A DNA stretch of 64,000 nt, from positions 248,001-312,000 of the IMG/VR virus record IMGVR_UViG_3300028920_000001, one strand, 5' to 3'. The notes below the pieces were generated by a model. The model saw only the letters and a program-made list of their open reading frames with translations, was not told the DNA's origin and searched no databases. Position numbers and translations under genes: made by a program. This document shows positions 37,788 to 55,535 of the stretch, one piece after another. How positions within the stretch are numbered: position 1 is the first letter of the stretch; each line of letters starts with the position of its first letter.

Positions 37788-38060
37788 ATGAGTAAATTTA
37801 ATATCGAGGATCTTCGGTTTTCTTCCAGTTCAATTGATGATTTTTTCAAGAGTCCTGAACCCAGGGTTCATACTTCTTCGACGGTTGGGAAGGTCCGGGT
37901 TTCAGGACTTCATGAATTAGCCGGATTTAGTTTTATAGCTGAAGATAAACTGGTTAGGACTAGTAAACAAGACTTTTGGCAATTAGGTCAAGATGATGAT
38001 GGGTATTTCATCGAACGTTTGGTCAGTGACGATGATGGGCCGATCAAGGAAGAAGAATAA
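37788..38060 (+). CDS. Head-cluster hypothetical protein
   Basis: GGAGG SD; 90 aa. Confidence 0.7.
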   Translation: MSKFNIEDLRFSSSSIDDFFKSPEPRVHTSSTVGKVRVSGLHELAGFSFIAEDKLVRTSKQDFWQLGQDDDGYFIERLVSDDDGPIKEEE

Positions 38061-39184
38061 TGGACCTAGATAAGATTGCCCGTCGGATTAGTTCTTCTGG
38101 TCGCATTCGTACGGCTGGACGAATTGAATTCGTCCGTGATCAAGGTCCTCTTCGTCGTGATTTGCGTGCCAAGGGGTTTTCATTTAGCTCCGATACCTTA
38201 AAGGATTTAGCTAAAGTATTATGGGCTGCTGAACGAGCTCATAGTTATGGAATGGCTGCTCTAAGATTATTTTCTAAGACCCCTGCCTCTGAGATCAGTC
38301 CTGATGGATTATTGGGTGGCCGTGGGTATATTCAGCAAATTAAAGAGATGCGTTCTAATCTTTCTCAAGCTGTTGAAGTTCTATCTGCATTTTCAGATAC
38401 TATGCATGATGAAGTAAATGCAGATCATTGGGCTGGTGCTAGTGAATCAGAACCTGAAATTGAAGAGATTGTAGAACAAGCTGATGCTGTGAAAGCTGCC
38501 CCCGAGCAGTACGTTGAGGAGCAATTTGAACAGCAAGTTCCGGAAGCATCTGAAGATTTTAATCAGTTAACAAATCCTTCTCCGGAAGAAATGAATCCGG
38601 TAGTAGAAAATTCTGGCCCTCCGGATTGGGATTGGGGTCAAGAAGAGACTCAGATTCAGTCTTCGGAGAAAGCAATCCACCGCCCAAAAGATCCAAAGGA
38701 CTCTGATTTAAGAGTCCTGAAGGGCCAAATATCGAGCTCATCAATTCCAGTAGAGACTTTGCCTGGTCCCAGAGTGAAGCATATTGGGCCGGGTGAGGGT
38801 GATCAGGAATTCGGATATTATGCCGATGATGATGAGCGGCCAAGTGATGATCCTATCGGAGAAGGATTTCGTTTTCTAGAAGAAGTATATCAGGATTGGG
38901 ACATTGGAAAGGGTGGGGTGACTGGTTATGATAATCCCACCGATGGTGATACATCAAAATTTAAGCAATCTGCTCTTAAATTGGCAAATTATTCATGGCT
39001 TCCTGGTTCTCGAAATGAAAAATTAATGCCATACTATGATCCTAATGCTACTGATGAAGATGTTGAATGGATGAGAGCTCATGATCAGCCTGAGCCTCCG
39101 AAAAGCTTAGCGCCTCCTCCTGAAAATATGTTGCCTGATAAATTATGGGAGGCTCGACGTAATGCCGACATCTCTTCCGACTGA
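38060..39184 (+). CDS. Acidic putative internal head protein with MDLDKIARRISS leader
   Basis: Shared N-terminal motif; TAATG coupling. Confidence 0.65.
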   Translation: MDLDKIARRISSSGRIRTAGRIEFVRDQGPLRRDLRAKGFSFSSDTLKDLAKVLWAAERAHSYGMAALRLFSKTPASEISPDGLLGGRGYIQQIKEMRSNLSQAVEVLSAFSDTMHDEVNADHWAGASESEPEIEEIVEQADAVKAAPEQYVEEQFEQQVPEASEDFNQLTNPSPEEMNPVVENSGPPDWDWGQEETQIQSSEKAIHRPKDPKDSDLRVLKGQISSSSIPVETLPGPRVKHIGPGEGDQEFGYYADDDERPSDDPIGEGFRFLEEVYQDWDIGKGGVTGYDNPTDGDTSKFKQSALKLANYSWLPGSRNEKLMPYYDPNATDEDVEWMRAHDQPEPPKSLAPPPENMLPDKLWEARRNADISSD

Positions 39185-40289
39185 AGATGCGGCTGATAAG
39201 GCTGTTAAAGATTTTGGAATTGGAACATATGATTCCGAATCAGATGATACTAGTGTAAAAGGCGAAGATACTGAAGGTAAAACTAAAAAAGGGAAGTCTC
39301 TTCCGGATGGAGGCGGATCTTTAGCTCCGGATCCAGAGGAGTGGCTTAGTTATCCTTATCCGGTATTAGATTATAGTAAATCATATTCTGCAAATACTCT
39401 TCCCGGGGATCTAGATCGTCCTCCGCGTGGACGGAGGCCAGCGGATGATACTAAAAATGTAGTTGCTGATGAATGGGATATTGAAGATTATGATGAGCCG
39501 GAAGAAGCTCTCCCAGAGGGAGATACTGGGAATAGGCATTCTGAATTACCAAGTGATAAGAGTAATCCATCATCCCGTGCTGACTATTATGATAAATTAA
39601 CCATCGGAAAGGCTATTAAGGATATTTGGCCAAGTGAAGATTCTGGGGCCTATGTAAGTCAAGATAAGGATGAATCTGAAACTGAAAAAGATGAAGAATC
39701 CCTTCCTACACCAGCTAAAAATGAAGTTTGTATGGATGATTTTTTAGGAGCCTTAGGAAATATTTGGTCTGGATTTGTAATGGATGATTTATCCAATCCT
39801 ACAGGGTTCCCATCAGAAGATTTTAGTGAAGAAGTGGATTATATGGATACTGATTCCGGCGGAAGTCTTCAACCATTTGGATATGGACCAATGGCTAGCA
39901 ATAATTTAAATGTGAGAATATCAACTGATTTGGAGTTAGTTGGAGAATTGACTAAAGAATTCTTGAGCAAACATGGGAAGAAGAACATTACGCGTCGTAA
40001 TGTTCTTGCTTTTTTGCAAGAAAAATCTCTACCTCAATATTTGGCATCTGATATTGTTCGGTGTATGAAGCTACGTCATAAAGTTCATATCCCTGATGTC
40101 ATGGACACTTTTCCGGTTAAGACTGCATCATCGGAAGAAATGAGTTTATATCGAATTCGTGATCAACTTGTTGGATATGAGATTCAAAATATGACCGATC
40201 CAACAACGGCCGCTAAATTTCGTCGATGTGCTGCCGATTTATCTCAAATCATAGCGCATCTAGAGAAGCTCGAGGATAGAAATGGCTGA
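39162..40289 (+). CDS. Acidic low-complexity putative head protein
   Basis: D/E/P-rich; repeated xLP motifs; VKTAS site. Confidence 0.65.
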   Translation: MPTSLPTEDAADKAVKDFGIGTYDSESDDTSVKGEDTEGKTKKGKSLPDGGGSLAPDPEEWLSYPYPVLDYSKSYSANTLPGDLDRPPRGRRPADDTKNVVADEWDIEDYDEPEEALPEGDTGNRHSELPSDKSNPSSRADYYDKLTIGKAIKDIWPSEDSGAYVSQDKDESETEKDEESLPTPAKNEVCMDDFLGALGNIWSGFVMDDLSNPTGFPSEDFSEEVDYMDTDSGGSLQPFGYGPMASNNLNVRISTDLELVGELTKEFLSKHGKKNITRRNVLAFLQEKSLPQYLASDIVRCMKLRHKVHIPDVMDTFPVKTASSEEMSLYRIRDQLVGYEIQNMTDPTTAAKFRRCAADLSQIIAHLEKLEDRNG

Positions 40290-42210
40290 TAAGAAGCTTC
40301 CGGATCTTCAGGATAGAGGTTTGGGTGACCTCACCCATCTTATGCACAATCAGAGTGTATCTGATCTCTCTTGGCTTGATATTGATCCTGAAGAATACCG
40401 TAGACAAGAGGCCCTGCCGAAGCAAAATCTGGATATGATTCCGGAGTTGGCACAGGCTTTAAGTCAAGAAGAAGATGGAGTCCCTCAAATGATTCCTCTT
40501 CGTCCTCAGACTATTGTAAATACGAATCCGCTTGAATACACAGATCCGGTTTCGCCCAGGAGTGGTCTTGGTGTAGATCCGAGAAAAGTTGAAATTCAAC
40601 TTGCTCATCACATTATGGCTGGCCTTTCAGATTCTTTAATTGAGAAGAATCTGAAATCTGAGTTTAGTTCTTCTCAAATTCGATCTGCATCAGTTAATGC
40701 ACGTCAACTTCTTGGTGAGCGTCATTTGTTAGGGAAAGTGTATATTAATGCTTCTCATTTTCCTCGATGCGCTCAGCGTGGTTCTCATAAGGATTTTGTA
40801 CGAAAGCACGCTAGCAAGGCTCTTTACGTTTTAGCTAAAGATGAATGTAATGGATGCGTCCATAATAATTGTGGGAATTGTTCGGTATTCAAGAAGCGAA
40901 TTGTTAGTTCTGTTCCTTATGATGAGTATACTTTTGCTCATTACTTAACTGGATTAGTTGCTGAAAAGCGTCTTATTCCGGAGGAAACTGCTAATATTCC
41001 GACCGATTCTGAGGGACGTAAGAAGCTGTTGGAATTAGGATTTAGTCGCTCTCCTGCGTTTGCTCGTAGCGTTCAGACCATTCAATACCAAAATACTGAA
41101 AAAAAGACAGATGCTGTAACTATGGATGACATTCGTGGTTACATGGCTAGGCAAGCATCTCGGGGTCCAGACCCTATGCCTAGTTCTATATATTTAGTAG
41201 CAGCTAAAAAACTTCAACATGGTGTTATTAGCTCAGACTCATTAGCTGCATCCTCTAATCCTGAAATTCGGAAATTAGCATCTGAATACGGGATTATTGG
41301 TCATACTTATCTAGATGCAGATGCATTGGGTGGATGTGCTGCAGCTTTAGATTTTATTAACAAAAAAAGGGTTCGTCCAAGTTTTGTGCTTTTGCGTTCG
41401 ACGGATGCGGAAGTATCTAGCAAGCCTTTTACGGAATTGGCTCAAATCACTAAGGTAACTGCTAATTATCCCAAATTAGGGAAAGAGCATTTAATTAATG
41501 CATTGGAATTGGCAGTGACTCAAAATCGAATTAGTGCTAAAAATGCTCAAAGTGTTTTGAAGAAGGCTTCTGACGATATTGATTGGCCTAGCTTAATTGC
41601 TCAAGTTAACTTATTTACTCCGGAGCCAAGAACAAAAACGCCTCAGTATCAGGGTCCGAAGATTAGAGGATATCATGGTGGCACTGTCATAGCTGAACAT
41701 GATGCTGAGTCGGTTCGGTTAGATATTGCTCGAATGATGAATGCTGGTCTTTCCGGTAAGGATTTGAAGAAGGCCATTCTGAGTCGATATAGCGTTGAGA
41801 GTCTTCGTCCTCTTCGTTCAATTATTGAACGGGCTGCTGCTGATGATGGAGTTCAGGGTCACTATTTTGTTGATCCTTCTGTTTACCCGGACTATGGTAA
41901 AGGTTGTAGGAATGGATCTAAGTCTTCTAATAGACGTGCATCTTATATTCTAGCTGGATCATCTTGTACTGGATGTACGCTTCAGACTTATCCGGGATAT
42001 TGTTCTAAATATTGTAAGCAGATGATTAGATCTGTGCCACAGGCGGTTCGAATTGCGGCGGCAGAACGAAGATCTGCCCGGGTGGCTAATAATGCTCCAA
42101 TTAATGATCCTGCCGAACAGTTTGGACTCGAGAAGCCTGAAATTGAAATTGAACCCGATCCTAAAGTCAAATCAGTTGATATTTCGATTTCCGGGCCGAC
42201 TATTGATTAA
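40282..42210 (+). CDS. Putative virion protein with internally repeated Cys-rich modules
   Basis: Three G-[KH]-x-[YF] modules, two of them with CxGC...C clusters. Confidence 0.7.
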   Translation: MADKKLPDLQDRGLGDLTHLMHNQSVSDLSWLDIDPEEYRRQEALPKQNLDMIPELAQALSQEEDGVPQMIPLRPQTIVNTNPLEYTDPVSPRSGLGVDPRKVEIQLAHHIMAGLSDSLIEKNLKSEFSSSQIRSASVNARQLLGERHLLGKVYINASHFPRCAQRGSHKDFVRKHASKALYVLAKDECNGCVHNNCGNCSVFKKRIVSSVPYDEYTFAHYLTGLVAEKRLIPEETANIPTDSEGRKKLLELGFSRSPAFARSVQTIQYQNTEKKTDAVTMDDIRGYMARQASRGPDPMPSSIYLVAAKKLQHGVISSDSLAASSNPEIRKLASEYGIIGHTYLDADALGGCAAALDFINKKRVRPSFVLLRSTDAEVSSKPFTELAQITKVTANYPKLGKEHLINALELAVTQNRISAKNAQSVLKKASDDIDWPSLIAQVNLFTPEPRTKTPQYQGPKIRGYHGGTVIAEHDAESVRLDIARMMNAGLSGKDLKKAILSRYSVESLRPLRSIIERAAADDGVQGHYFVDPSVYPDYGKGCRNGSKSSNRRASYILAGSSCTGCTLQTYPGYCSKYCKQMIRSVPQAVRIAAAERRSARVANNAPINDPAEQFGLEKPEIEIEPDPKVKSVDISISGPTID

Positions 42211-42247
42211 TTAAATATTAATTAAATATTTTAGGTAGGGTTAGAGT

Positions 42248-42853
42248 ATGGATGATGGCCCTACCGATGATCAGGATAAGGGTAACGGCGACGGCAAAGG
42301 GAAATTAATAACTTTCCCTGGTGGTAAGAAAGTTGACCCTGAAGAAGTTGGCCTGGATAGTATAGTAGGCCAAACTGGGGATATTCCTACTCCAGATATT
42401 TTAGATCCAGTGTACTTAGATAAAGAATTGCGGGAGCGAGTTGAATATGTAAAGAAACAGGCTCTAGTTCAGGCTATCACTGAAAAAAAGAGTACTATTG
42501 ACACTATCGATGCTGTTTTGGTTGAAATAGCGGAAGAATTAGCTCATCTTAAATTTGAAAGAAGAAAAGCTGCTAAAGAAGGTAAAAATACTGCGAGCTA
42601 TACCATTGGTAGAATAGGTTCTCTGACTAAATTAGCTGATTTATTATTGAAGAAGAAAGAATCTATGATGCAAGAGGAACTGGACCTGAAATCGTCCAGA
42701 TTCCAGGCAGTTTTTAGAGTTTGGATGGAATTTTTCCATGATTCGATGGAAAAATCTGGTATTTCTCCAGAAGTAATTGATGTTATATTTCAACAGATGA
42801 AAGCTGATATGGTTGATTGGGAAAGAAAAATGTCTACTGCCGGTATTGAATAA
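42248..42853 (+). CDS. Candidate terminase small subunit
   Basis: Helical 201-aa protein coupled (TAATG) to terL; positional inference only. Confidence 0.4.
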   Translation: MDDGPTDDQDKGNGDGKGKLITFPGGKKVDPEEVGLDSIVGQTGDIPTPDILDPVYLDKELRERVEYVKKQALVQAITEKKSTIDTIDAVLVEIAEELAHLKFERRKAAKEGKNTASYTIGRIGSLTKLADLLLKKKESMMQEELDLKSSRFQAVFRVWMEFFHDSMEKSGISPEVIDVIFQQMKADMVDWERKMSTAGIE

Positions 42854-45495: not shown

Positions 45496-47319
45496 ATGGC
45501 AGCTAAGAAGAACGGGAATGGACGAGTTAGAACCGGTCAAATTCCGGTTCAGCACGTTAATATCCAGAAGGTTCCTTCCAAAAAGCTAACTAAATTAGAA
45601 AGGCAAGCCCGGAGAGAAGCTGCTCAATCTATTCGTGTGGCTGCTACCTGTGGTCCAATTGGTGGATCTGGATTAGGAAGCGGGGGTTTTGGTGGTTATG
45701 GGAATGCCGATATTGGATTAGCTAATTCCAATTTTTACAGTCCTCAGTTATCAACTGACTTTTTAGAGTTACCTCAATCTGAGCGTGAAAAACGCGAGTT
45801 ATTTAGATTTTGGTATACAACTCATCCAATCGTTGGGGCATCAATTGATTTTCATACTGATGTCCCGATGTCAAAAATTCGGTTGTCTCTGCCGAAGGGG
45901 AAAGATCACAAAAGAAATAAGCAGATCTTGCATTACTATCAAGAAATGTGCAGGCGACTGCGGCTTTTCCAAGTTCTCTACGATGCCACTCATGAATATT
46001 GGTTACATGGAAATGTGTTTATTTTCTGTGAAGACCAAGATATGGCACCAGAACTTCCTGATTCTATCTTCGTGAAAGAAGTGGAAGAAGAAATTGGTGA
46101 AGTTGATGCATTAGGAAACCCGACGGTTCGTAAAGAAAAGAAACAAGTAGAGAAATCTGAAAAAGAAAGAATGGATGCCATTCACGAATATGTGGCTGAT
46201 AAATATCAGGGATGGCAGCGTCTTCAAATTTTGCCGCCAGAGCAAGTTAAACTAGAAGTTTTTCAGTATACTAATAAAGTTAATATGGAACTTATCCCGA
46301 GCGAAAAAGATCGTTTGGTGGTATTGAGAGCTGAAGATCAAGGGGATCCGGAAGCTAGAAGAATTGCTGATGATATTCCAGAACAAATTAAAGAGAATTT
46401 ACTTAACGGTCAGCCTATTCCATTAAATACTAGTCCTTACGAAGATTATATTTGTTCTTCGTTTTGTTATCATTTATCGCACAAAAAATCATCTTATGAT
46501 GATCGTGGAATTTCAATTTTAGAGCGTTGTCTTCGTACTCTTCTCTATCAAGATAAACTTCGTCAAGCCCAGACTTCGATTGCCTCCCGTGCAATGACAC
46601 CAAAGCGCATTGTGTGGGCAGACAAAATGTCTCAAACAGATGTGGAAGATCTGCGAGATCAGGTTGATCAAGCTCTGATTGATCCGGATTTCACTATTAT
46701 TACTAATTTTGAGCTTCATTGGGATGAGATTGGAGCTCGAGATCGTCTTTTAGATTTAGGTACTGAATACGAGATTACAAATAAATTATTGTTTATCGGC
46801 CTTCGAATTACTGAGGCTATGTTAACAGGAGAAAGTACCTATTCCGGGGAGCGTATTCATCTGGACGTGATGAATACAATGTATTTGCTTTACCGTGAGA
46901 CAATAGCGGAATTCGTTGAGGAGCAGATTTTTGCACCGGTAGCCGAAAAGAAAGGTTTTTGGGAAATTGATGAATATGGGAATCGGGTTCTTCTTTATCC
47001 GAAGCTTCAGTTTACCCGACTGGCTCTTCGAGATAATGCTGAACTTCAGGATTTCATGTTTAATTTATATCAAAAAGGCTCATTGCCTATTTCATATATT
47101 TATGAACTTTTGAACATTGATGTTGATGACGCCCATTCGGAACTTCAGAAGGATGTATTTACTCTGAAGGATTCTCAGATGAATGAATTGGTCAGGAACC
47201 TTCTAGGTGCGGCCGGGGAAAAGCTTTTGGATGAGACCGATGTGATTGATAAGATAGTAAAAAGTCTTGGTCTTAAACATGAAAAGAAAGAAGGAGATCG
47301 TTTTGGTAAGGAAGAATAA
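45496..47319 (+). CDS. Portal protein
   Basis: Position after terL; HPIVGASIDFH, EYWLHGNVF, RGISILERC, LTGESTYS; 607 aa. Confidence 0.8.
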   Translation: MAAKKNGNGRVRTGQIPVQHVNIQKVPSKKLTKLERQARREAAQSIRVAATCGPIGGSGLGSGGFGGYGNADIGLANSNFYSPQLSTDFLELPQSEREKRELFRFWYTTHPIVGASIDFHTDVPMSKIRLSLPKGKDHKRNKQILHYYQEMCRRLRLFQVLYDATHEYWLHGNVFIFCEDQDMAPELPDSIFVKEVEEEIGEVDALGNPTVRKEKKQVEKSEKERMDAIHEYVADKYQGWQRLQILPPEQVKLEVFQYTNKVNMELIPSEKDRLVVLRAEDQGDPEARRIADDIPEQIKENLLNGQPIPLNTSPYEDYICSSFCYHLSHKKSSYDDRGISILERCLRTLLYQDKLRQAQTSIASRAMTPKRIVWADKMSQTDVEDLRDQVDQALIDPDFTIITNFELHWDEIGARDRLLDLGTEYEITNKLLFIGLRITEAMLTGESTYSGERIHLDVMNTMYLLYRETIAEFVEEQIFAPVAEKKGFWEIDEYGNRVLLYPKLQFTRLALRDNAELQDFMFNLYQKGSLPISYIYELLNIDVDDAHSELQKDVFTLKDSQMNELVRNLLGAAGEKLLDETDVIDKIVKSLGLKHEKKEGDRFGKEE

Positions 47320-47347: not shown

Positions 47348-49582
47348 ATGTTGCATCAAGGTGACAGCTCTTTGAGTCCTGCTGAAAAGGAGGATCAAGA
47401 GATTGAACATCGAATGAAGAGTATTAAGGAACGTCCTCATTCTAGAAAGTACAGATCTCGGCGTCCTGATCGTAGTAAACGTAGACAAAGGATGAAAATT
47501 GAAGATTCAGATATCCAAGCTCCTGTAAAGGCGGATCCAGATTTGTCAAAGATGGCTGCACGTATAGCAGTTGAACCCTTTGAAGATATTAGAGAACTCT
47601 TTAATAAGCGTGCTCAGTCGATTTTCAGGGCTTTATCTGAACTTTCTACTCCTTTAGCTGATGCATTTCATTCTGAAATGCATGAAAAATTCATAGATGT
47701 TTGGGATAATACTAAGAAACAACAACTACTATTACAGGAAATGGGAGAATTTAAAGATAAAATTAAGGGTGAAGTAAAAAAATACGGTAGGATATTAGGA
47801 AAAGCTGAACCGGCAGCTGTGGCAAGAATTATTGCTGATAATTGGCCTGATAAATCAGATTGGCAAACTCGAGCGGCCATAATTGGTGGAATAAGAAAAG
47901 CAGCAGACGATTCTAAGCTTCCTGAAGCTATTAAAGTCCCTTTTCTACGTCAAGACATTCCTAATGTATTAGCAGACAATAAAGCAATAAAGGCAATTCT
48001 TAAATCTAATGTGAAAAAATCCGGGGCTGATGAAAATGATTTATTCAGATTTGCTCAGTTAGTGGCTGCTTATCAAGTTTTATCTAAAAATCCGGATAAA
48101 ATTTCTACTGATCAATTAATGGCAGATGTTAAAAAATTGGCAGGATCATTAGACGAGCAGGTTTCTGAAGTTGTTGATCTTAATAACATTATGAATATTT
48201 GGACTAGTGCTTTAGGTCAGATTAAAGCCAAAGATACGAATATAGATTATAAACCAAATGATTATGATAAATTGTTGAAAAATCTGAGCAGTTTTTTTGA
48301 TCAAAGTAAATATGTGAATCCTGAACCTACCATGAAGGAGATGGAAAAACTATTGAAAGAAGAATTTAAAGATATTCCACCTGAAATGGAAGCAATGTTT
48401 AAGGGGTTCAAACGTGCAGCAACTTCTAATGAAACTCCAAGGATTAGGATAATGGCTAAAAAAGTCGTTGACTATGCTAAAGTGGCCGGTCGGGTTGCTA
48501 CCTATCATGGAATAATTGATCAAAGGGGCAATCCTACAGATCCTATTAATACCGGGTGGAAATCGTACGATAAAAGATATTTCGGTGAAGATAATTATAA
48601 ATCAATTGTTAAATATGCCAAAGAATTGCTAACTCAAGATTGGTTTAAATATGGATGGGGAGAGAAAAAGAGCGATGCTAGCCTTAGAGCCGCTCTTGAT
48701 GTAGCTATCTATGTGGGAGATTCCACACTTCATCAATCTAAGATTGATTCAGAGACATATAATATGCTCTTGAATCGATTGGCGGGTTGGGGATATGATT
48801 CATTTTCGGAGACTATTGTCTTTGAATCCGGAAAAGGCACCAAGAGGAGCGCTTCAATGAAGGCAGAAATCCAAAATTTAGTTCGGATTGCTAATGATAT
48901 CCGTCAGACTAATCCTACGGTGGCCTTTGAGATGTTAAAGAACATCAGAGGACTTACTGCTGGGCTTGGTATTGAGCCTGAGCTTGAGCCTGAGCCCCCT
49001 ACTACTTCTGGTGCTAAAGAAGATATTTCTAAGGCAATTGAAGAAACCATTTCTGAAATGTCCGGAGAGGAACCTGACAAGGTAGCTCAGGCTATTGCTG
49101 ATATTCTCGAAAAAGGCTTCGAGAAGATGCGTCCCAAGTCCCCTGAAGACCTTCAAACAGGCCTGGAAGAGCTCGTTGAAGCTGCTGGAGAGGTTATGGG
49201 CGGTCAGGCAGCAGTCGGATCTACTCTTGGGTACTTGGTTAGGGTGGCCTATAAAGCCCCTTCTCTTCGTCCCTTAATTCTGCCGGTGGTCGCGGCAGCT
49301 AAAAAAGGTAAGGGTAAAGGTAAAGCCCAGCCTAAGGGTAAAGGTAAAGCCCAGCCTAAGGGTAAAGGTAAGGCCCAGCCTAAGGGTAAAGGTAAAGCCC
49401 AGCCTAAGGGTAAAGGTAAAGCCCCACCATTTGGTGGTAAGAAGGCCCCACCATTTGGTGGTAAGAAGGCCCCACCATTTGGTAAGAAGGACGAAGAGGA
49501 AAAGAAGACCGCTAAAGGTAAAAAGACTTCTAAAGGTAAGAAGCGTCGGTCTTCTATTACCGCCACAGATCTGGAATGGTGA
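47348..49582 (+). CDS. Large putative internal head protein with Lys/Gly/Pro repeat tail
   Basis: Internal DLSKMAARIA; (KGKGKAQP)4 and GGKKAPPF repeats. Confidence 0.7.
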   Translation: MLHQGDSSLSPAEKEDQEIEHRMKSIKERPHSRKYRSRRPDRSKRRQRMKIEDSDIQAPVKADPDLSKMAARIAVEPFEDIRELFNKRAQSIFRALSELSTPLADAFHSEMHEKFIDVWDNTKKQQLLLQEMGEFKDKIKGEVKKYGRILGKAEPAAVARIIADNWPDKSDWQTRAAIIGGIRKAADDSKLPEAIKVPFLRQDIPNVLADNKAIKAILKSNVKKSGADENDLFRFAQLVAAYQVLSKNPDKISTDQLMADVKKLAGSLDEQVSEVVDLNNIMNIWTSALGQIKAKDTNIDYKPNDYDKLLKNLSSFFDQSKYVNPEPTMKEMEKLLKEEFKDIPPEMEAMFKGFKRAATSNETPRIRIMAKKVVDYAKVAGRVATYHGIIDQRGNPTDPINTGWKSYDKRYFGEDNYKSIVKYAKELLTQDWFKYGWGEKKSDASLRAALDVAIYVGDSTLHQSKIDSETYNMLLNRLAGWGYDSFSETIVFESGKGTKRSASMKAEIQNLVRIANDIRQTNPTVAFEMLKNIRGLTAGLGIEPELEPEPPTTSGAKEDISKAIEETISEMSGEEPDKVAQAIADILEKGFEKMRPKSPEDLQTGLEELVEAAGEVMGGQAAVGSTLGYLVRVAYKAPSLRPLILPVVAAAKKGKGKGKAQPKGKGKAQPKGKGKAQPKGKGKAQPKGKGKAPPFGGKKAPPFGGKKAPPFGKKDEEEKKTAKGKKTSKGKKRRSSITATDLEW
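49310..49490 (+). repeat. Coding 24-bp tandem repeats of two unit types
   Basis: aagggtaaaggtaaagcccagcct x4 (one substitution), a hybrid unit, then ggtggtaagaaggccccaccattt x2. Confidence 0.95.
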
Positions 49583-49624: not shown

Positions 49625-50110
49625 ATGAAGAAGCAAGTTGCCAATTTAGTTCTTTCCAAGCTTGACAGTACTGCCAGCACAATTGAGACCCTTGCCAAAG
49701 AGGGTAAAATTGAGCGACAGGCGGCGAGTCAGCTAATTAAGAATCTGGACTCGTTTGCTGATAAGTTTGAAGTAGCAGCATTCGGAGAAAAGAATCTTAA
49801 GGCCCGTCAAGCTAAGGTTATTCAGCAGGATAATGATGAGCCGTATATGAAGACCTTTGACAATGTCAATGAGGTTCATCAGTCTGATGCTGACGAGCCT
49901 TATATGCATAAGTCTCCTCCGTCGTTCAATTCCAAGGGAATTGATAACTACGACCAGGATGCTAGCTCGACGGTTTCTACTCGTGATGAATATCAGGTTC
50001 GCGATTTGAGCGAGCATGCTGACGGCACCAAGCCGCAGCCGTCCTGGCCGAATGGCTCGGCCGGTAAGAGCACTCGTCAGGGTACTGCAAAGCCGAAGTC
50101 TTGGGCCTAA
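49625..50110 (+). CDS. Putative head protein
   Basis: AGGAG SD; duplicated DEPYM; GC-richer codons. Confidence 0.7.
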   Translation: MKKQVANLVLSKLDSTASTIETLAKEGKIERQAASQLIKNLDSFADKFEVAAFGEKNLKARQAKVIQQDNDEPYMKTFDNVNEVHQSDADEPYMHKSPPSFNSKGIDNYDQDASSTVSTRDEYQVRDLSEHADGTKPQPSWPNGSAGKSTRQGTAKPKSWA

Positions 50111-50148: not shown

Positions 50149-50901
50149 ATGCGGAGCAGAGTTGCGTTTGTAGACGATCAAGTTATGGCGAAGGACTATG
50201 CCACGGGTGACATCGTGCGCAAAGTCAATTTCCGTGACTATTTTCAAACTCCGTATGCCGGTCGTGTCATTTATTCTAACCCGAAGACTGGAAAAGTCCA
50301 GGTTCAATGGCCTTGGGGAGCTGAACAGGAGTCTCCAACCGAATTGATTCGGGAAATCAATCCGAAGTTTGTTCCTCCGATCGCCTTGAATCAATGGTAT
50401 TCTACTTGGGAGGGTTCTCGTCTAATCAATGACAAGGACCTTCTCAAGGAAGAAGATAAATGGCGTAAGTCCCTTACTGCTTCTACCGTTCAAATTATTA
50501 CCAAGCATGAACAAAATACCATGCCGGTGTGGCGGCATGCTTGTAAGGCTTGGCATAATGGTTTAGATGAGGTTGAAGCTTTCCGGATTCTTTCTTTCCA
50601 ATTTGGAGAGGAATTCGGTGACGAAACAATCAGATTAACTATTTCTAATCTCTATAATCTCGGACGTCGAACTAAACTAGCGATTTATTGGAAAGATAAT
50701 ACTCGTCGATATAAAGTTACGAAGAAAGAAAAAGAAACTGGGAAATTAAAGTGTCCGCGTTGCAGTGGAACTCGGATGAAGCCGCGAGTTTATCGACAAG
50801 GCAAAAAATTGATTCAGTGTCGTGATTGTGGTTTTTCAATTTCTCCGAAAGATTTGATTTGGCCCTCTGAGACAATTACTGATATTGAAGATGATGAATA
50901 A
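50149..50901 (+). CDS. Head-cluster protein with C-terminal zinc ribbon
   Basis: CPRC...CRDCG. Confidence 0.7.
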   Translation: MRSRVAFVDDQVMAKDYATGDIVRKVNFRDYFQTPYAGRVIYSNPKTGKVQVQWPWGAEQESPTELIREINPKFVPPIALNQWYSTWEGSRLINDKDLLKEEDKWRKSLTASTVQIITKHEQNTMPVWRHACKAWHNGLDEVEAFRILSFQFGEEFGDETIRLTISNLYNLGRRTKLAIYWKDNTRRYKVTKKEKETGKLKCPRCSGTRMKPRVYRQGKKLIQCRDCGFSISPKDLIWPSETITDIEDDE

Positions 50902-50903
50902 AT

Positions 50904-51413
50904 TTAAGATTCCATAATCATTTGGACATCCATCAGTTCCTGAGCTGCACAAATCACTCCATCCCATTCCCATTGATTATGCCAATGGGTAGTGATTTTT
51001 CTTGAGATCGGCCTATTTTCTATAGGTCCTTTATCAATATTATGCTGTCCAAACTGTCGACAGGCAAATTGAGTAGCCGCAGCTATAATTATACGAGTTC
51101 TGAACATTTCGAATGACCAGTGTTGGTTATAATTTTTGAGATTAAAATACATAGTATTTTTATCTTCGGATTTGAGATCCATACTGAAGACTAATACTAT
51201 TTGATTATAATAACCCATCCGATCTAAGGTCTCAAACTGTTTTTCTTCAAATTTATGAACTTTTAACTGAATGTTTTCTAAATTTGGAACTGGTTGAATT
51301 TGTCCTTTGCTATCTTGGATTTCAATATATTTCTTCACTTTCTTTTTAGACCGTTCCCATCTTCCTCCGATGGTACTTCGGCGGTCTGGATGAGCTCCTC
51401 GGATTCGAGGCAT
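50904..51413 (-). CDS. Hypothetical protein ending VQMIMES, antisense within the head operon
   Basis: GTAATAT-N5-ATG upstream; shared C-terminal motif. Confidence 0.65.
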   Translation of the reverse strand: MPRIRGAHPDRRSTIGGRWERSKKKVKKYIEIQDSKGQIQPVPNLENIQLKVHKFEEKQFETLDRMGYYNQIVLVFSMDLKSEDKNTMYFNLKNYNQHWSFEMFRTRIIIAAATQFACRQFGQHNIDKGPIENRPISRKITTHWHNQWEWDGVICAAQELMDVQMIMES

Positions 51414-51464
51414 GGATAATATTACATCTCAGAATTTTGATAATGAATCATATGCAGGGAATTT

Positions 51465-54224
51465 ATGGCCTTCAAGCGTAAAGCAAATGCTATAGTTTCA
51501 AAATCTGACATCCATTTCGAAGAATGGATGGATGAAATTCGTAAAAATAATGAAGGGGCCGTTCCTAAGGATTACGTAGGACGAGTTGCTAAAGACGTTC
51601 TTCGTAAATGTGACCCGAATAAATATTTACTGTCTCATGCCACTATAGTCGCATCAGTTGATGTGTATGCCCCTCAGGGCGTCAAGACTGGCAAGATGAC
51701 AGATAATCGGGGAATGGAAATTGAGGTTAAGTGGCCTGAATATCGAATTAAGCCTGAATGTCAAGAATTGATCAATAATAATGGAGATGCTTGGGAAAGA
51801 TCTTTACTGTTATCGACATATCGGACCTTTATTGGGGCTCCGAACTATTTAGAGCATATACAAATCCCAGAATTATCCAAGGGATTTATTGTTGATGCGA
51901 TTGCTCGAGACCTTGGTAATACTTGTTATATTGATATTCTGGTTGGTACTGATCGCAAACATAATGTACTTATTCAGGATATTTTATCTAACAAGTTAAA
52001 TGCGATGAGTATGGGGTGCTTTGTTGCTGGTACTAAAGTTACTTTAGCAGATGGCTCCATGATTTCTATTGAAGATATTAGACCTGACATGCATGTTTTC
52101 TCTCAAAAGGGGAATGCTTGTCGAGTAAAGAATTTACAAATCCGAGAAAATCGATGGGGGATGTGTGAAATTAAGACAACTGGTCATTTTAAGTTGTCTT
52201 GCACTGATAATCATAAATGGTATGCAGTTCCTAGAGAAGAGGTTGAATATCGATCTACTTATAGGAAGAATCAAGTTCCGATAAATAAAGACTATGGATT
52301 TGAATATCGTGAAGCTGGTGATTTGAAAGTTGGTGATATAGTCGCTTTCCCGATTCCTCAAAAGGTTGTTGAGACTGATATATCAGAATCTGATGCTAGG
52401 TTAATCGGTATTTTTGCTGCTGATGGGTGGAAGTTTGAAAATACTCATGATTCTACTATTGGTTTAGGTTTTTGTTTGAATAGATTTGAATCTCAAACGA
52501 TTAATGACGTTGTTAATAAGATAGAACAAATCATGTGGTTGTCTGGGGAAAACCGGATGACTGCAAATGGGCATTCTTGTAATCGTTCGGTTAATTCTTC
52601 GATTCGGAGAAATGCTTGTTATTTAACATCAACTAGTCGTAAAGCTAGAAATCTGATTGATGAATTTGTGCATGGCAGAACAGCCAAGACTAAGATTTTT
52701 GATGAAGCGGTTTTGTGCTGGCCTAAGAATTTACAAAAGGCTCTTTTATCAGGTTATGTTGATGGGGATGGATCGGTTTCAACGGCTAAAAGGAAAACTA
52801 AGAATCTTCATATTAGTAGCAGAAATCCTGATTTGATTAATCAACTGAGGTTAATTGCAGCCCGTTGTGGATTGATTACTACTATAAGCAAAGCGAAAAG
52901 AAAAGGTACTAAATTAGTTCCCGGTGGAGCTGGGGTTGACTATCAGCTTCGATTTATGAATAATGGTGTTAATCAAATCAATGCTAATAAACTAAATGAT
53001 ATTGAAATTAAAGAAAGTCTAGTTGGTTTAAATAAACGATGGATCACTGATAAATATATTTATACTACTGTTGAATCAATTCGAAGATTTGATTATGATG
53101 GATTTGTATATGATATGGAGGTTGAGGGAGACCATTCATATACAGTGAATGGTATCGGGGTGTCTAATTGTGTGTCGTTATTTACGATTTGCACCCATTG
53201 TGGCAATGTAGCTATTGATGATACTCAATTTTGTAGTCATGTTGCATATGATGGAAAGAACTCTGAATTTATCGATGAGAATGGCCAGAAGCATCGACTA
53301 GCAGAATTGATTGGTCACACTACAGTTCCTAATAGTAATCAATTTATCGAGGCTTCTTGGGTTCGAGCTCCAGCATTTTCTGGTGCCCAGCGTAGGAATG
53401 TGTTAAACGCTGAGATGCCAACTATCGCTACTAAGATTGAAGCTGCCGGTAAGATTTATGAAATTAAGTGCAGCCAGGATGAATTGGAAGGTATTTTAAG
53501 AGCCGCGTCGATTGATCCGAAGTTAAATGTGTTGCATACAGCCCAAGATGAAGAGGATGATGCAGCCGGATCTGCTTTAGATGAGCTTATGGGTGGTGGG
53601 GACGAAGAAGCAAAGCCGGAAGATAAAGATGAAGAGGTTAAAGCTGAGGCTGAAAAAGATAAAGCTGAAGCTGAAACTGAAGGTGGGGAAGAAACTCCGG
53701 CAGAACCGGCTAAGCCCAAGATTGATAAATTGGTAGAAAAAGCTCAGGAACAGCTATTACAGACGATTGTTAATGATTTGAGTGAACGTTTAGCTCCTAA
53801 ACCTGAAGATGTTGGGGTTGCAATTCCCGGTATTGAGGAAGCTAGTTATAATGATAATCTAGTTCGAGCATCTCAATTTGATAAGAGGCTCCAATCTATA
53901 TTTAAGGATTATCCCAAGATTGTCAAATGGGCATCTCGGGTTAATAGATTGATTCATCTCGGTGGTCGAGATGCTATCAAGAGAGCAGGATATACTCCTT
54001 CAGATCTGATAGTTTTTTCATGGATAAATGATACTGTTAGATCTAAGGTTTATCCACCGGGTCTATATAAACTTGCCATGAAGATTGGTCCAATCAATTC
54101 TTTCCCTAGCGAAACTTCTTATTTCGCTGCGTGTCAAATTGATTTGAACCGTCCTCTGGTCCCTGGCGAGAAGAGATTCCTTCGGCAGAAGGGTCGAATC
54201 GCGTCGCTGTCCACCAAATTTTAA
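51465..54224 (+). CDS. Probable prohead maturation protease containing an intein
   Basis: NNNGDAW, YRTFIGAPNYLEH, SKGFIVDA, SMG|C, FIEASWV..PAF; lies before scaffold and MCP. Confidence 0.7.
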   Translation: MAFKRKANAIVSKSDIHFEEWMDEIRKNNEGAVPKDYVGRVAKDVLRKCDPNKYLLSHATIVASVDVYAPQGVKTGKMTDNRGMEIEVKWPEYRIKPECQELINNNGDAWERSLLLSTYRTFIGAPNYLEHIQIPELSKGFIVDAIARDLGNTCYIDILVGTDRKHNVLIQDILSNKLNAMSMGCFVAGTKVTLADGSMISIEDIRPDMHVFSQKGNACRVKNLQIRENRWGMCEIKTTGHFKLSCTDNHKWYAVPREEVEYRSTYRKNQVPINKDYGFEYREAGDLKVGDIVAFPIPQKVVETDISESDARLIGIFAADGWKFENTHDSTIGLGFCLNRFESQTINDVVNKIEQIMWLSGENRMTANGHSCNRSVNSSIRRNACYLTSTSRKARNLIDEFVHGRTAKTKIFDEAVLCWPKNLQKALLSGYVDGDGSVSTAKRKTKNLHISSRNPDLINQLRLIAARCGLITTISKAKRKGTKLVPGGAGVDYQLRFMNNGVNQINANKLNDIEIKESLVGLNKRWITDKYIYTTVESIRRFDYDGFVYDMEVEGDHSYTVNGIGVSNCVSLFTICTHCGNVAIDDTQFCSHVAYDGKNSEFIDENGQKHRLAELIGHTTVPNSNQFIEASWVRAPAFSGAQRRNVLNAEMPTIATKIEAAGKIYEIKCSQDELEGILRAASIDPKLNVLHTAQDEEDDAAGSALDELMGGGDEEAKPEDKDEEVKAEAEKDKAEAETEGGEETPAEPAKPKIDKLVEKAQEQLLQTIVNDLSERLAPKPEDVGVAIPGIEEASYNDNLVRASQFDKRLQSIFKDYPKIVKWASRVNRLIHLGGRDAIKRAGYTPSDLIVFSWINDTVRSKVYPPGLYKLAMKIGPINSFPSETSYFAACQIDLNRPLVPGEKRFLRQKGRIASLSTKF
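52017..53168 (+). mobile_element. Intein (384 aa) with LAGLIDADG endonuclease
   Basis: Starts CFVAGT; block B TDNHKW; LIGIFAADG and LLSGYVDGDG; ends VYDMEVEGDHSY..NGIGVSN, followed by Cys+1. Confidence 0.93.
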
Positions 54225-54266
54225 GGCATTGATAAGCGGATATCCTAATAGGAGGCATTTGTAACA

Positions 54267-55535
54267 ATGACTCGTCGTCGAAGCACTTGGCAGCAGCCGA
54301 AACCCACTTCTCATCAGGCAGCCACAAGTCGTAAAGCAGAAGATATTTACGACATGAATCAGGAGCATCCGCAACCCTCCGCAACGGAGTATGAGAGCGG
54401 AAGCCCCGATAGTTGGGCTGAAACTCCTACCACCAATAAGAACGTGGAAGGTGATTACGATGGTGATCACGTGAAGCGTAATGAGGTTGGCTTAGGTGAA
54501 CTCCGGGATGATACCTGGAGTCACAAAGATGCCGATCGGTGGAATGGTGGCGGCAAATATGACAATCAGGGTAAGTTAGCGGCCAAAAAGGCTTCGTTAG
54601 CTGAGCGGATTGCTCATGCCACGCTTCGAACCGATAATAAGGATCTGGTCACTCAGCAGGCGGCAGATTTAATGAATCTGCCAATTAAGGTCCTGGCTGC
54701 TACCGCTGAGCGGATGAATAAGGTATCCCCGGATGCCTTGGACAAAGAGCGGAAGTATCGTCGGGCTTTGGCTTGCTGCAAGCTGAGCGCCAACATTCTC
54801 GGTGAGACGGCCACTGAGGAGCAAGTTGAGCGGTTAGCACAGACCATCATGACGATCGATGATCCTACTCTCAAGTCGATTTTGAAGATATCGGCTGAGG
54901 TTCGGACAGCCGAGTGCAATTGTCCTCCTGGTGAGTGCACTTGTGACGACAAGACTGCTGGTGAGTTAAAGCCTCCGATGGGAGAAGGTGAAGAAGAATC
55001 CGAAGAGGAGACTGCAGCTGCTAAGTGCATGGGTGCTGACGACGAGAAGAAGCTCGAGGAAATGCTTCCTGAGCAAAGAGAAGAGACAGGATGTCTGGTT
55101 CCGGTCGCACCTGCTCCAGCACCTGCTTTGACCGAGATGTTTGAAGAGGCTCCGGCCCCAGCCGCACCGGTCATGTCTCCTCCAGTTCCGGCGGGACCTG
55201 TTGCCCCCGCGACTGCTACTGATTCTCCGGAAATCACTTTCGATGATGAATCGGACATCACCTTTGATGAGCCGGAGGAGCCTTCCGCCATGACTGCTAC
55301 TGATCAGCAGGAATTGTCGGCTCTCTTTGATGATGACGAAGAGGTTCAGGCCCAGCGTCAAATTCAGGCATCTGAGCAAGAGCAGAAAGCTCGTGAGCTC
55401 GGTAACTATGGTCCACACCCGGCTGCACGTACTGCCTCTGATGGTGCCAAGAAGCTTGGTGCTGTGACTCGCACTGCGTCCAATAAGGATGAAGACGAAC
55501 TTGCGGCTCTTTGGGCCGGAAACGAACTCGCATAA
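54267..55535 (+). CDS. Probable capsid scaffolding protein
   Basis: Acidic, Pro/Ala-rich, many R/K-T-A sites; GGAGG SD; between protease and capsid genes. Confidence 0.65.
   Translation: MTRRRSTWQQPKPTSHQAATSRKAEDIYDMNQEHPQPSATEYESGSPDSWAETPTTNKNVEGDYDGDHVKRNEVGLGELRDDTWSHKDADRWNGGGKYDNQGKLAAKKASLAERIAHATLRTDNKDLVTQQAADLMNLPIKVLAATAERMNKVSPDALDKERKYRRALACCKLSANILGETATEEQVERLAQTIMTIDDPTLKSILKISAEVRTAECNCPPGECTCDDKTAGELKPPMGEGEEESEEETAAAKCMGADDEKKLEEMLPEQREETGCLVPVAPAPAPALTEMFEEAPAPAAPVMSPPVPAGPVAPATATDSPEITFDDESDITFDEPEEPSAMTATDQQELSALFDDDEEVQAQRQIQASEQEQKARELGNYGPHPAARTASDGAKKLGAVTRTASNKDEDELAALWAGNELA

What the first reader, a model, noticed from the sequence alone, without database searches (positions are those of the whole stretch)
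37788..55535. Recurring [R/K/H]-x-A-[S/A/G] sites in head proteins suggest the protease specificity
Seen: RIRTAG (38060), VKTASS (39162), IRSAS and VRIAAA (40282), IRVAAT (portal N-terminus), KRAATS and KRSAS (47348), LRAAS, LHTAQ and LVRAS (protease tail), VRTAE, DKTAG, ARTAS and TRTAS (scaffold). They often fall at borders between folded and acidic segments, and the shared leader ends in R-I-A-A. Inference: the protease cuts after basic-x-Ala, unlike the post-Glu cleavage of T4 gp21 and phiKZ gp175.
Basis: partly seen in the sequence, partly recalled or inferred. Interest (0 to 1): 0.6.

Follow-up and report, generated by a model that had tools for sequence, protein, structure and literature searches.

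The report
Predicted cleavage motif of megaphage head protease
A four-residue pattern (Lys/Arg, any residue, Ala, then Ser/Ala/Gly) recurs far more often than chance in the head proteins of this 427-kb phage and its distant relatives, at places where a capsid-maturation protease would be expected to cut, so it is probably that protease's recognition site, although no cleavage has been measured.

Summary
The motif [RKH]-x-A-[SAG] is real: 36 sites in 6,171 head-block residues against 15.2±3.8 in shuffles (z 5.4), three times the density in the rest of the genome. Permuted control motifs show no excess.

The same excess recurs in the head blocks of phage G, Tunturi 5 and LR745208 (z about 7 each), but not in their tail or neighbouring genes. 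A residue-by-residue scan gives K/R, then V/T/Q/L/K/I (never P), then only Ala, then S > A, G.

A subset of sites are conserved islands in otherwise variable sequence:
- just after the protease domain (87 of 130 distant cluster representatives, against 26 in shuffles);
- 32 residues from the scaffold C-terminus (56 of 58 homologues);
- near the protease C-terminus;
- in ORF 47348;
- in the capsid-protein N-arm.

A 12-residue N-terminal leader, M-N-[LF]-x-[KR]-I-A-S-R-I-A-A, heads seven adjacent small acidic proteins and others (13 matches against 0.2 expected).

The protease is intein-interrupted and its best structural match is T4 gp21. The layout resembles T4 targeting leaders and herpesvirus R and M sites (Ala↓Ser).

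Cleavage itself, and the exact bond cut, remain inferred. Three quoted strings do not fit the motif, and several sites are not conserved.

The parts
51465..54224 (+). Prohead (capsid maturation) protease gene, 919 codons. It is interrupted by an intein at nt 52017-53168 (residues 185-568), inserted between SMG and C of the invariant SMGC motif.
   Evidence: PHROG 18299 'head maturation protease', E 3.2e-9; Pfam intein and LAGLIDADG domains. A natural intein-free allele, L066:3797-5401, is 99% identical over the C-extein. The AF2 model of that allele best matches T4 gp21, 5jbl. H131, S182 and H234 are invariant in 24 homologues.
53499..53510 (+). R-A-A-S (in LRAAS) about 45 residues after the last conserved strand of the protease domain. 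Candidate self-release site.
   Evidence: Motif kept in 36 of 41 homologues; motif identity 0.68 against flank 0.21. It lies at the start of the disordered stretch 287-366 of the model. A [RK]xA[SAG] site lies 15-75 aa after the domain in 87 of 130 cluster representatives, against 26.3±4.7 in shuffled tails, with a peak at 40-50 aa.
54195..54206 (+). R-I-A-S, starting nine residues before the protease C-terminus.
   Evidence: Kept in 31 of 42 homologues; motif identity 0.69 against flank 0.36. Among distant representatives a site within the last 16 aa occurs in 15 of 130, against 6.1±2.3 in shuffles.
54267..55535 (+). Scaffold-like acidic protein (422 aa, net charge -37) between the protease and the decoration and capsid genes. 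It has seven motif sites.
   Evidence: Position and composition; 58 homologues in IMG/VR loci.
55428..55439 (+). R-T-A-S, whose Ala is 32 residues from the scaffold C-terminus. It is the best conserved site and the candidate maturation (M-like) site.
   Evidence: Kept in 56 of 58 homologues; motif identity 0.87 against flank 0.36. It is the top M1 'conserved island'.
55470..55481 (+). Second R-T-A-S, 18 residues from the scaffold C-terminus.
   Evidence: Kept in only 14 of 58 close homologues. In the distant relatives L001, L002 and L070 the motif (AKVAS, TKVAS, IRVAS) sits at this position, just before the terminal L-x-x-L-W segment.
54312..54323 (+). H-Q-A-A near the scaffold N-terminus.
   Evidence: Relatives mostly have R-Q-A-A here; pattern kept in 45 of 52. 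This is the only support for His at the first position.
56547..56558 (+). R-I-A-A in the N-arm of the major capsid protein (gene 56457-57350).
   Evidence: Kept in 59 of 64 homologues. Sequence conservation of the capsid protein begins at G28-R29, just before it. The motif is absent from the phage G and Myrna capsid proteins, so use of this site is uncertain.
45634..45645 (+). R-V-A-A at the end of the basic 50-residue N-terminus of the portal (gene 45496-47319), before a Gly-rich linker.
   Evidence: Pattern kept in 4 of 6 homologues that align there.
48845..48856 (+). R-S-A-S at residue 500 of ORF 47348-49582 (744 aa, modular).
   Evidence: Kept in 23 of 27 homologues; motif identity 0.74 against flank 0.35. 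In L039 the homologous gene is split into two ORFs close to this point.
47537..47572 (+). Leader-like element D-L-S-K-M-A-A-R-I-A-V inside ORF 47348 (residues 64-75), after a very basic N-terminus.
   Evidence: Match to the leader pattern.
49715..49726 (+). R-Q-A-A at residue 31 of ORF 49625-50110.
   Evidence: Pattern kept in 22 of 30 homologues although residue identity is only 0.21 (DARLAS, DPKVAA, DPRLAS).
38060..38119 (+). N-terminus of ORF 38060-39184: the leader-like M-D-L-D-K-I-A-R-R-I followed by R-T-A-G.
40282..42210 (+). ORF of 642 aa with eight motif sites, six of them [RK]-x-A-S. Candidate multiply processed head protein.
   Evidence: Only one detectable homologue, so conservation was not testable.
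40119..40130 (+). K-T-A-S at residue 320 of ORF 39162-40289.
   Evidence: No homologue was found in the fetched loci.
57757..60591 (+). Seven consecutive small acidic ORFs. Each carries the leader M-(M)-[ND]-[LF]-x-[KR]-I-A-S-R-[IV]-A-[AN]. It is N-terminal in six and at residues 65-77 in the first.
   Evidence: The proteins are similar only over the first 13-23 residues.
63520..64000 (+). Two more ORFs with leader-like N-termini (M-D-L-A-R-I-A-R-R-L and M-D-F-I-K-M-A-A-R-I). The second runs off the window.

Best explanation
The window holds the head-assembly block of a complete 427-kb phage of the phage G / Tunturi 5 / LR745208 lineage. Its prohead protease is a serine protease whose closest solved relative is T4 gp21. 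The gene carries an intein in the active-site motif that must splice out first.

The protease most likely recognises [K/R]-x-A-[S/A/G] on proteins inside the procapsid. The x favours V, T, Q, L, K or I and is never P.

Shown here:
- the motif is position-specific and enriched only in head-block proteins, in four phages that share little sequence;
- a subset of sites are conserved islands;
- a 12-residue leader made of two overlapping copies of the motif heads a family of otherwise unrelated small acidic proteins.

Inferred:
- The protease frees itself at the site about 45 residues after its catalytic domain.
- It cuts the scaffold about 32 residues from its C-terminus, detaching it from the shell.
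- It trims the portal N-terminus, and perhaps the capsid-protein N-terminus.
- It clips the leaders from cargo proteins after the leader has brought them into the procapsid, as in T4.
- It chops proteins with many sites, such as ORF 40282.
- By analogy with herpesvirus assemblin, the cut would be between Ala and the small residue that follows.
For: Enrichment in the window: 36 observed against 15.2±3.8, z 5.4; odds ratio 3.2 against the rest of the genome; permuted controls flat.

An unbiased scan of about 1,000 reduced-alphabet patterns puts basic-aliphatic-Ala on top (p 9e-11 with the leader ORFs). Without them it is the top non-repeat pattern (p 2e-5).

Replication:
- phage G head block, 28 against 8.6 (z 7.1);
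- Tunturi 5, 29 against 9.2 (z 7.0);
- LR745208, 46 against 16.1 (z 7.5);
- phage G neighbouring genes, z 2.0; Tunturi 5 tail genes, z 1.0.

Single-position scan over the four head blocks:
- position 1: only K (3.3x, p 3e-21) and R (2.3x);
- position 3: only A (2.9x, p 7e-25);
- position 4: S (4.1x, p 6e-18), A and G;
- position 2: P occurs 0 times against 2.3 expected.

Conserved islands: scaffold 388 (56/58), protease 679 (36/41), protease 911 (31/42), ORF 47348 residue 500 (23/27). Motif sites are over-represented among islands in variable surroundings: 3/15 against 31/1,555, p 0.0035.

Protease family-wide: 87 of 130 representatives of 50%-identity clusters have a site 15-75 aa after the domain, against 26.3±4.7 in shuffles. 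Total tail sites are 314 against 121±10.

Leader: 13 matches against 0.2 in shuffles (maximum 2). An N-terminal motif is present in 13 of 91 genes of the block against 19 of 526 elsewhere, p 2e-4.

Folded cores (terminase, portal body, capsid body, decoration protein, protease domain) hold 0 sites against 3.3 expected, P 0.028.

Protease identity. No ClpP or S78 gene was found elsewhere in the complete genome.

T4-like and phiKZ-like post-Glu patterns are not enriched.
Against: - No mature N-terminus or cleavage product has been observed for this phage or, in the literature I could reach, for its relatives.
- Many individual sites are not conserved. Across all contexts, motif sites are retained in register no better than several control patterns.
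- Some conserved copies lie in places where cutting has no obvious purpose, for example R-I-A-S, which starts nine residues before the protease end.
- The phage G and Myrna capsid proteins lack the N-arm site.
- The phage G N-terminal leader, MKRL[IVMF]KK[SAG], mostly lacks the Ala.
- The fold match to gp21 is modest (Z 6.5; Foldseek E 6.6e-3), and the protease model has mean pLDDT 66.9.
Confidence: 0.6

Rival explanations
1. The motif is a docking or address signal only. It would bind a common receptor in the procapsid (scaffold, capsid inner face or portal) and bring proteins in, without being the protease's cutting site.
For: Its most striking form is a terminal leader on many unrelated proteins. 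A conserved copy lies at the very C-terminus of the protease (R-I-A-S), where a tether is more plausible than a cut. The conserved scaffold copy sits next to another conserved block, G-A-K-K-L-G.
Against: An address needs one copy per protein, yet ORF 40282 has 8, the LR745208 scaffold has 12, and protease tails have 2-7. The demand for Ala followed by Ser/Ala/Gly, and the ban on Pro, is typical of a protease subsite profile. A site sits right after the catalytic domain across the family. The two roles are not exclusive: in T4 the targeting leader ends in the cleavage site.
Confidence: 0.2
2. The excess is a by-product of composition or secondary structure: Ala-rich amphipathic helices in scaffold-like proteins, with no specific reader of the motif.
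For: Head-block proteins are somewhat richer in Ala and Lys than the rest of the genome. The motif often lies in predicted helices. In-register retention is no better than for some control patterns.
Against: Per-protein shuffles already control for composition. Permuted motifs with the same residues are flat. The single-position scan admits only K/R, only A, and only S/A/G. The pattern is kept while residues change, for example DARLAS, DPKVAA, DPRLAS. It also holds a fixed distance from the protease domain in 130 diverged representatives.
Confidence: 0.07
3. The sites are cut by a different enzyme (a host protease or a second phage protease), or mark another modification such as phosphorylation of Ser in R-x-x-S.
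For: R-x-x-S resembles basophilic kinase sites. Phage G also encodes ClpP and ClpX, which were detected in its virions (PMC12484599).
Against: No ClpP or S78 protease gene is found in this complete genome. More than half of the sites have Ala or Gly instead of Ser, which rules out phosphorylation as the common reading. The motif is confined to head-block proteins and tracks the prohead protease's own tail.
Confidence: 0.05

Closest known systems
T4 prohead protease gp21 with the capsid-targeting sequence (CTS) of the internal proteins
   Same: T4 gp21 is the best structural match of the protease (5jbl). Both have a short shared N-terminal leader on several otherwise unrelated small head proteins, ending in the presumed protease motif. 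Both involve processing of the portal-proximal and core proteins.
   Different: T4 cuts after Glu in [L/I]-x-E (established knowledge; PMC5694885). That pattern is not enriched here. There is no sequence-level membership in Pfam S77 (although the control was silent). The leader sequence is unrelated. The cargo proteins here are acidic.
phiKZ gp175 / SPN3US gp245 prohead proteases of giant phages
   Same: Both are giant-phage heads with many processed internal proteins. Both have motif-defined cleavage with several sites per propeptide (PMC10052503).
   Different: Those enzymes cut after A-x-E or [S/A/G]-x-E. Here [SAG]-x-E is not enriched (z -1.3) and the motif has a basic residue and Ala instead. 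The phage lineage also differs (phage G-like, HK97-type capsid protein).
Herpesvirus assemblin (protease with R site and M site)
   Same: In both, Ala is followed by Ser or another small residue at the presumed cut. One site lies directly after the protease domain and one lies 25-37 residues from the scaffold C-terminus, freeing the scaffold from the capsid protein (PMC4498786). Both have the His-Ser-His order of invariant residues.
   Different: Herpesvirus sites have a hydrophobic residue at P4 or P3 (V/L-x-A↓S, Y-L-Q-A↓T) rather than Lys/Arg at P3. Here the protease and scaffold are separate genes with unlike C-termini. Assemblin did not appear among the listed fold matches.
HK97 gp4-type prohead proteases (Pfam Peptidase_S78)
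   Same: Both have the gene order portal, protease, scaffold or delta domain, capsid protein, with an HK97-fold capsid protein. Both have a C-terminal tail on the protease thought to anchor it inside the procapsid.
   Different: There is no match to PF04586 anywhere in the genome. Here there is a separate scaffold protein instead of a delta domain.

Membership tests
Assemblin-fold prohead serine proteases (T4 gp21, HK97 gp4, phiKZ gp175, herpesvirus assemblin) | Profile match to a head-maturation protease family | tested here: met
   PHROG 18299 'head maturation protease', E 3.2e-9, on the N-extein. Tunturi 5 homologue gp331 is annotated as head maturation protease.
Assemblin-fold prohead serine proteases (T4 gp21, HK97 gp4, phiKZ gp175, herpesvirus assemblin) | Fold of the catalytic domain like a solved member | tested here: inconclusive
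   T4 gp21 (5jbl) is the top hit of both searches and covers model residues 49-244. The scores are modest: Foldseek E 6.6e-3, VIA Z 6.5, rmsd 3.5 over 120 residues. The model has mean pLDDT 66.9.
Assemblin-fold prohead serine proteases (T4 gp21, HK97 gp4, phiKZ gp175, herpesvirus assemblin) | Invariant His and Ser (plus a third His or Glu) in the order His-Ser-His | tested here: met
   H131, S182 (in SMGC) and H234 are invariant in 24 homologues. The H-S spacing of 51 is similar to T4's from memory. Which residue is the third catalytic member was not verified in three dimensions.
Assemblin-fold prohead serine proteases (T4 gp21, HK97 gp4, phiKZ gp175, herpesvirus assemblin) | Gene lies between the portal and the scaffold and capsid genes | tested here: met
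   Order: portal 45496, protease 51465, scaffold 54267, decoration 55749, capsid 56457. The same order holds in LR745208, Tunturi 5 and phage G.
Pfam Peptidase_S78 (HK97) / Peptidase_S77 (T4) | Sequence match above the curated cut-off | tested here: not met
   No match in the ORF or anywhere in the genome. For S77 the control genomes were silent too, so that negative result is weak.
T4-type capsid-targeting leaders | One short N-terminal peptide shared by several otherwise unrelated proteins | tested here: met
   Seven adjacent ORFs plus at least six others. Similarity is confined to the first 13-23 residues. There are 13 pattern matches against 0.2 in shuffles.
T4-type capsid-targeting leaders | Leader ends in the protease's recognition motif | tested here: met
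   The leader core K-I-A-S-R-I-A-A is two overlapping copies of the enriched motif, and conservation stops right after it. That the motif is the protease's site is itself inferred.
T4-type capsid-targeting leaders | Leader-bearing proteins are packaged in the head and lose the leader | not testable with these tools
   No virion proteome exists for this phage. Phage G proteome tables and the phage G structure paper were not held.
Herpesvirus-style R-site and M-site arrangement | Site directly after the protease domain and site 25-40 residues from the scaffold C-terminus | tested here: met
   87 of 130 representatives have the first. 56 of 58 scaffold homologues have the second, whose Ala is 32 residues from the end in the window.
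Herpesvirus-style R-site and M-site arrangement | Scissile bond Ala↓Ser | not testable with these tools
   Only the residue preferences are seen.
Herpesvirus-style R-site and M-site arrangement | Protease and scaffold share a C-terminus through nested in-frame genes | tested here: not met
   They are separate genes with unlike C-terminal sequences.
Post-Glu specificity of T4 gp21 and phiKZ gp175 | [LIV]-x-E or [SAG]-x-E enriched in head proteins | tested here: not met
   z 1.6 and -1.3 against shuffles, with no excess over the rest of the genome.

The most novel reading that the evidence does not exclude
A very large clade of phage G-like jumbo and megaphages (over 1,600 protease clusters at 50% identity) shares one addressing-and-processing code. 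A transferable leader of about 12 residues loads some 20 unrelated, mostly small acidic cargo proteins per genome into the procapsid. An assemblin-like protease with P3 Lys/Arg, P1 Ala and P1' Ser/Ala/Gly specificity then removes the leader, frees itself and detaches the scaffold. The arrangement is closer to herpesvirus R and M sites than to any phage protease studied so far. The leader alone would then predict the injected protein cargo of uncultured megaphages.
Probability: 0.35. Interest if true: 0.75.

Novelty: new variant of a known kind. Interest (0 to 1): 0.6.

Why it matters
Recognition motifs of prohead proteases are known by experiment for only a few phages (T4, the phiKZ group, HK97). 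They are what allow mature virion proteins, propeptides and packaged cargo to be read from sequence.

A well-defined motif and leader for the phage G lineage would allow three things:
- It could be tested at once in two cultured members, phage G and Tunturi 5.
- It would let head-internal and probably injected proteins be predicted in hundreds of uncultured huge-phage genomes.
- It would add a phage example with an Ala/small-residue site and an R/M-like layout, which bears on the shared ancestry of phage and herpesvirus capsid maturation.

Tried and rejected
- Complex prediction on the protease domain with the scaffold C-terminal 73 residues gave 'no answer' (score 0.00). It is not evidence either way.
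- The AF2 model of the capsid protein, meant to place the N-arm site, had pLDDT 49.8 and was useless.
- A global test of whether motif sites are retained in register better than ten control patterns did not discriminate, because folded regions keep everything. It was replaced by the conserved-island test.
- blastn of the terminase-portal DNA against phages found nothing.
- A profile search of solved structures by sequence found only low-complexity matches.
- The phage G structure and proteomics paper (PMC7316594) is not held. The supplements of the 2025 phage G multi-omics paper are not held. The Tunturi paper has no proteomics.
- Four literature searches found no statement of this motif.
- The Myrna (cluster C) capsid protein lacks the N-arm motif, and its gene order differs, so it was not pursued.
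- Phage G's leader, MKRL[IVMF]KK[SAG], was considered as the same signal and rejected. It is analogous in position but different in sequence and usually lacks the Ala.
The natural intein-free allele L066:3797-5401 was used by reference instead.
- No reads tools were used.

Full report
**What the window is.** The window is bases 248,001-312,000 of a complete 426,960-bp phage genome with direct terminal repeats. The capsid protein (56457-57350) is 73% identical to that of the uncultured 485-kb phage LR745208. It is 45% identical to that of Tunturiibacter phage Tunturi 5 and 36% identical to phage G gp27.

The finding's range is the head-assembly block, all on the + strand:
- three unannotated acidic or Cys-rich ORFs (38060, 39162, 40282);
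- large terminase (42853);
- portal (45496);
- a modular 744-aa ORF (47348);
- two small ORFs;
- the prohead protease (51465);
- an acidic scaffold-like protein (54267);
- a decoration-like protein (55749);
- the capsid protein.

**The observation.** LHTAQ, VRTAE and LVRAS do not fit the stated motif.

[RKH]-x-A-[SAG] occurs 36 times in the 6,171 residues of the block. Per-protein shuffles give 15.2±3.8 (z 5.4). The density is 5.83 per 1,000 residues, against 1.85 in the other 601 predicted proteins (odds ratio 3.2, p 1.6e-8). Permuted motifs built from the same residues are not enriched. T4-like [LIV]-x-E and phiKZ-like [SAG]-x-E patterns are not enriched either.

I also enumerated about 1,000 reduced-alphabet patterns without prior choice. 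Basic-aliphatic-Ala patterns came first when the leader ORFs are included (p 9e-11). Without them, basic-aliphatic-Ala is the first non-repeat pattern (p 2e-5).

**Independent replication.** The motif was defined on the window, so the relatives serve as test sets. Observed against shuffled counts:

| Gene set | Observed | Shuffled | z |
|---|---|---|---|
| Phage G head block | 28 | 8.6 | 7.1 |
| Tunturi 5 head block | 29 | 9.2 | 7.0 |
| LR745208 head block | 46 | 16.1 | 7.5 |
| Phage G neighbouring genes | 9 | 4.7 | 2.0 |
| Tunturi 5 tail genes | 24 | 19.9 | 1.0 |

I then varied one position at a time over the four head blocks pooled:
- First position: only Lys (3.3-fold, p 3e-21) and Arg (2.3-fold) are favoured. 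His is marginal.
- Third position: only Ala (2.9-fold, p 7e-25).
- Fourth position: Ser (4.1-fold, p 6e-18), Ala and Gly.
- Free position: V, T, Q, L, K and I are favoured, and Pro is absent.

Flanking positions show little preference. A profile this sharp points to a specific reader of the motif.

**Which sites are conserved.** I fetched 79 IMG/VR loci around capsid-protein homologues and aligned the homologues of each head protein.

| Site | Pattern kept | Motif identity | Flank identity |
|---|---|---|---|
| Scaffold residue 388, R-T-A-S | 56/58 | 0.87 | 0.36 |
| Protease residue 679, L-R-A-A-S | 36/41 | 0.68 | 0.21 |
| Protease residue 911, R-I-A-S | 31/42 | 0.69 | 0.36 |
| ORF 47348 residue 500, R-S-A-S | 23/27 | 0.74 | 0.35 |
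| Capsid N-arm, R-I-A-A | 59/64 | 0.64 | 0.65 |
| Scaffold residue 16 (R-Q-A-A in relatives) | 45/52 | 0.52 | 0.51 |
| ORF 49625 residue 31 | 22/30 | 0.21 | 0.47 |

The last row shows the pattern surviving while the residues change.

In variable surroundings, motif sites are over-represented among conserved four-residue islands: 3 of 15 against 31 of 1,555 (p 0.0035; Mann-Whitney p 0.025).

Other sites are not conserved: DKTAG, the second scaffold R-T-A-S, and ORF 47348 residues 68, 183 and 263. These may be chance or lineage-specific.

In the more distant relatives L001, L002 and L070 the scaffold motif sits just before the terminal L-x-x-L-W segment. The position drifts while the motif persists, as short linear motifs do.

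**The protease and its own tail.** The ORF carries a 384-residue LAGLIDADG intein between SMG and C of the invariant SMGC motif. A natural intein-free allele, L066:3797-5401, is 99% identical over the C-extein and served as the spliced form.

Its AF2 model has mean pLDDT 66.9. It shows a catalytic domain (residues 50-245), a helix, a disordered stretch (287-366) and a confident helical C-terminal domain. T4 gp21 is the best match by both Foldseek (E 6.6e-3) and VIA-align (Z 6.5 over 120 residues). H131, S182 and H234 are invariant.

The L-R-A-A-S site lies at the start of the disordered stretch.

A profile search of 1.84 billion cluster representatives found 1,629 relatives. Of the 130 best with a usable tail, 87 have a [RK]-x-A-[SAG] site 15-75 residues after the domain. 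Shuffled tails give 26.3±4.7. The sites peak at 40-50 residues and their sequences are very diverse. Total tail sites are 314 against 121±10.

The proteases of phage G, Tunturi 5 and LR745208 each carry two or more copies in their tails.

**The shared leader.** Seven consecutive small acidic ORFs after the capsid gene (57757-60591) carry M-(M)-[ND]-[LF]-x-[KR]-I-A-S-R-[IV]-A-[AN]. They are alike only over those first residues.

The leader pattern occurs 13 times in the genome's six frames, all on the + strand between window coordinates -7211 and 63855. In the predicted proteome there are 13 matches against 0.2 in shuffles.

Leader-like copies head ORF 38060 and lie inside ORF 47348. Looser copies occur on genes elsewhere in the genome. 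Relatives carry similar N-termini.

The leader is two overlapping copies of the motif, and conservation ends with it.

**Mechanism.** The most economical reading is that the motif is the recognition site of the prohead protease. On that reading:
- the leaders bring cargo into the procapsid and are then clipped, as with the T4 targeting sequence;
- the protease releases itself at the site behind its domain;
- the scaffold loses its last 32 or so residues.

The last two steps mirror the herpesvirus R and M sites, which are Ala followed by Ser or Thr. The M-site cut removes 37 residues in pseudorabies virus (PMC4498786).

The complete genome has no ClpP or S78 gene that could serve instead. Folded cores (terminase, portal body, capsid body, decoration protein, protease domain) contain no site, against 3.3 expected (P 0.028).

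What is shown is enrichment, specificity, conservation and placement. What is inferred is that cutting happens, and that it falls after the Ala.

**Rivals.**
- An address-only role fits the leaders and the copy at the protease C-terminus. It does not explain proteins with 8-12 copies or the subsite-like residue profile. The two roles can coexist.
- Compositional bias is excluded by shuffles, permuted controls and the single-position scan.
- Phosphorylation of R-x-x-S fails because over half of the sites have Ala or Gly.

**Known or new.** Searches of the held literature found experimentally defined motifs only for T4 and the phiKZ group, both of which cut after Glu. Nothing was found for phage G, Tunturi 5 or huge phages. 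The phage G cryo-EM and proteomics paper could not be read, so prior knowledge there cannot be excluded.

I rate the finding a new variant of a known kind: a prohead protease and targeting-leader system with a different, herpesvirus-like site. Confidence that the motif is the protease's site is about 0.6.

Noticed in passing
window 52017-53168 (inside 51465-54224); L008, L014, L054, L055; P0002-P0151: The protease gene is a hot spot for inteins. The window has a 384-residue LAGLIDADG intein exactly between SMG and C of the active-site motif, and many relatives have one at the same place. Others have an intein-sized insert near residue 105, and L054 has both. Cluster representatives reach 1,963 residues with up to five matched stretches. 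An intein-free allele 99% identical over the C-extein exists (L066).
   Followed up: partly
L003 (phage G) and W01:C1 28218, 35181, 73330, 207449, 244460, 255160, 446709: Phage G has its own 8-residue N-terminal leader, M-K-R-L-[IVMF]-K-K-[SAG], on at least ten genes scattered over the genome. There were 8 exact DNA-pattern matches, all on the forward strand, and none for the reversed control pattern. One match (416047) is followed by stop codons and is probably not a gene. Its role is unknown. It is analogous in position to the window's leader but different in sequence.
   Followed up: partly
window 49250-49480 (C-terminus of ORF 47348-49582): Tandem peptide repeats occur in a very basic tail: K-G-K-G-K-A-Q-P (about five copies) followed by F-G-G-K-K-A-P-P (about three copies). 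This tail is one of the most variable parts of the protein among relatives.
   Followed up: no
window 54000-58000: G+C rises to 0.51 over the scaffold, decoration and capsid genes, against 0.34-0.42 in the surrounding 2-kb bins.
   Followed up: no
genome positions given as window coordinates -162012, -141080, -140583, -87009 (- strand), 21188, 102998, 107518: Further ORFs far from the head block start with leader-like peptides (for example M-N-L-N-K-I-A-A-R-M and M-V-N-L-S-R-I-A-A-K-I-A-A). They are candidates for additional packaged proteins.
   Followed up: no
window 57757-57960: The first ORF of the leader array has 64 in-frame residues before its leader. The codon before the leader is GTA, which is not a start codon. 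This copy is therefore either an N-terminally extended protein with an internal leader, or its true start is unclear. A 400-bp gap without a called gene precedes it.
   Followed up: no
genome 381769-385581 (window 133769-137581): A 1,270-residue Ala/Gly-rich protein outside the head block has 13 [RK]-x-A-[SAG] sites, the largest excess outside the block. It was not identified; it may be a tape-measure-like protein.
   Followed up: no
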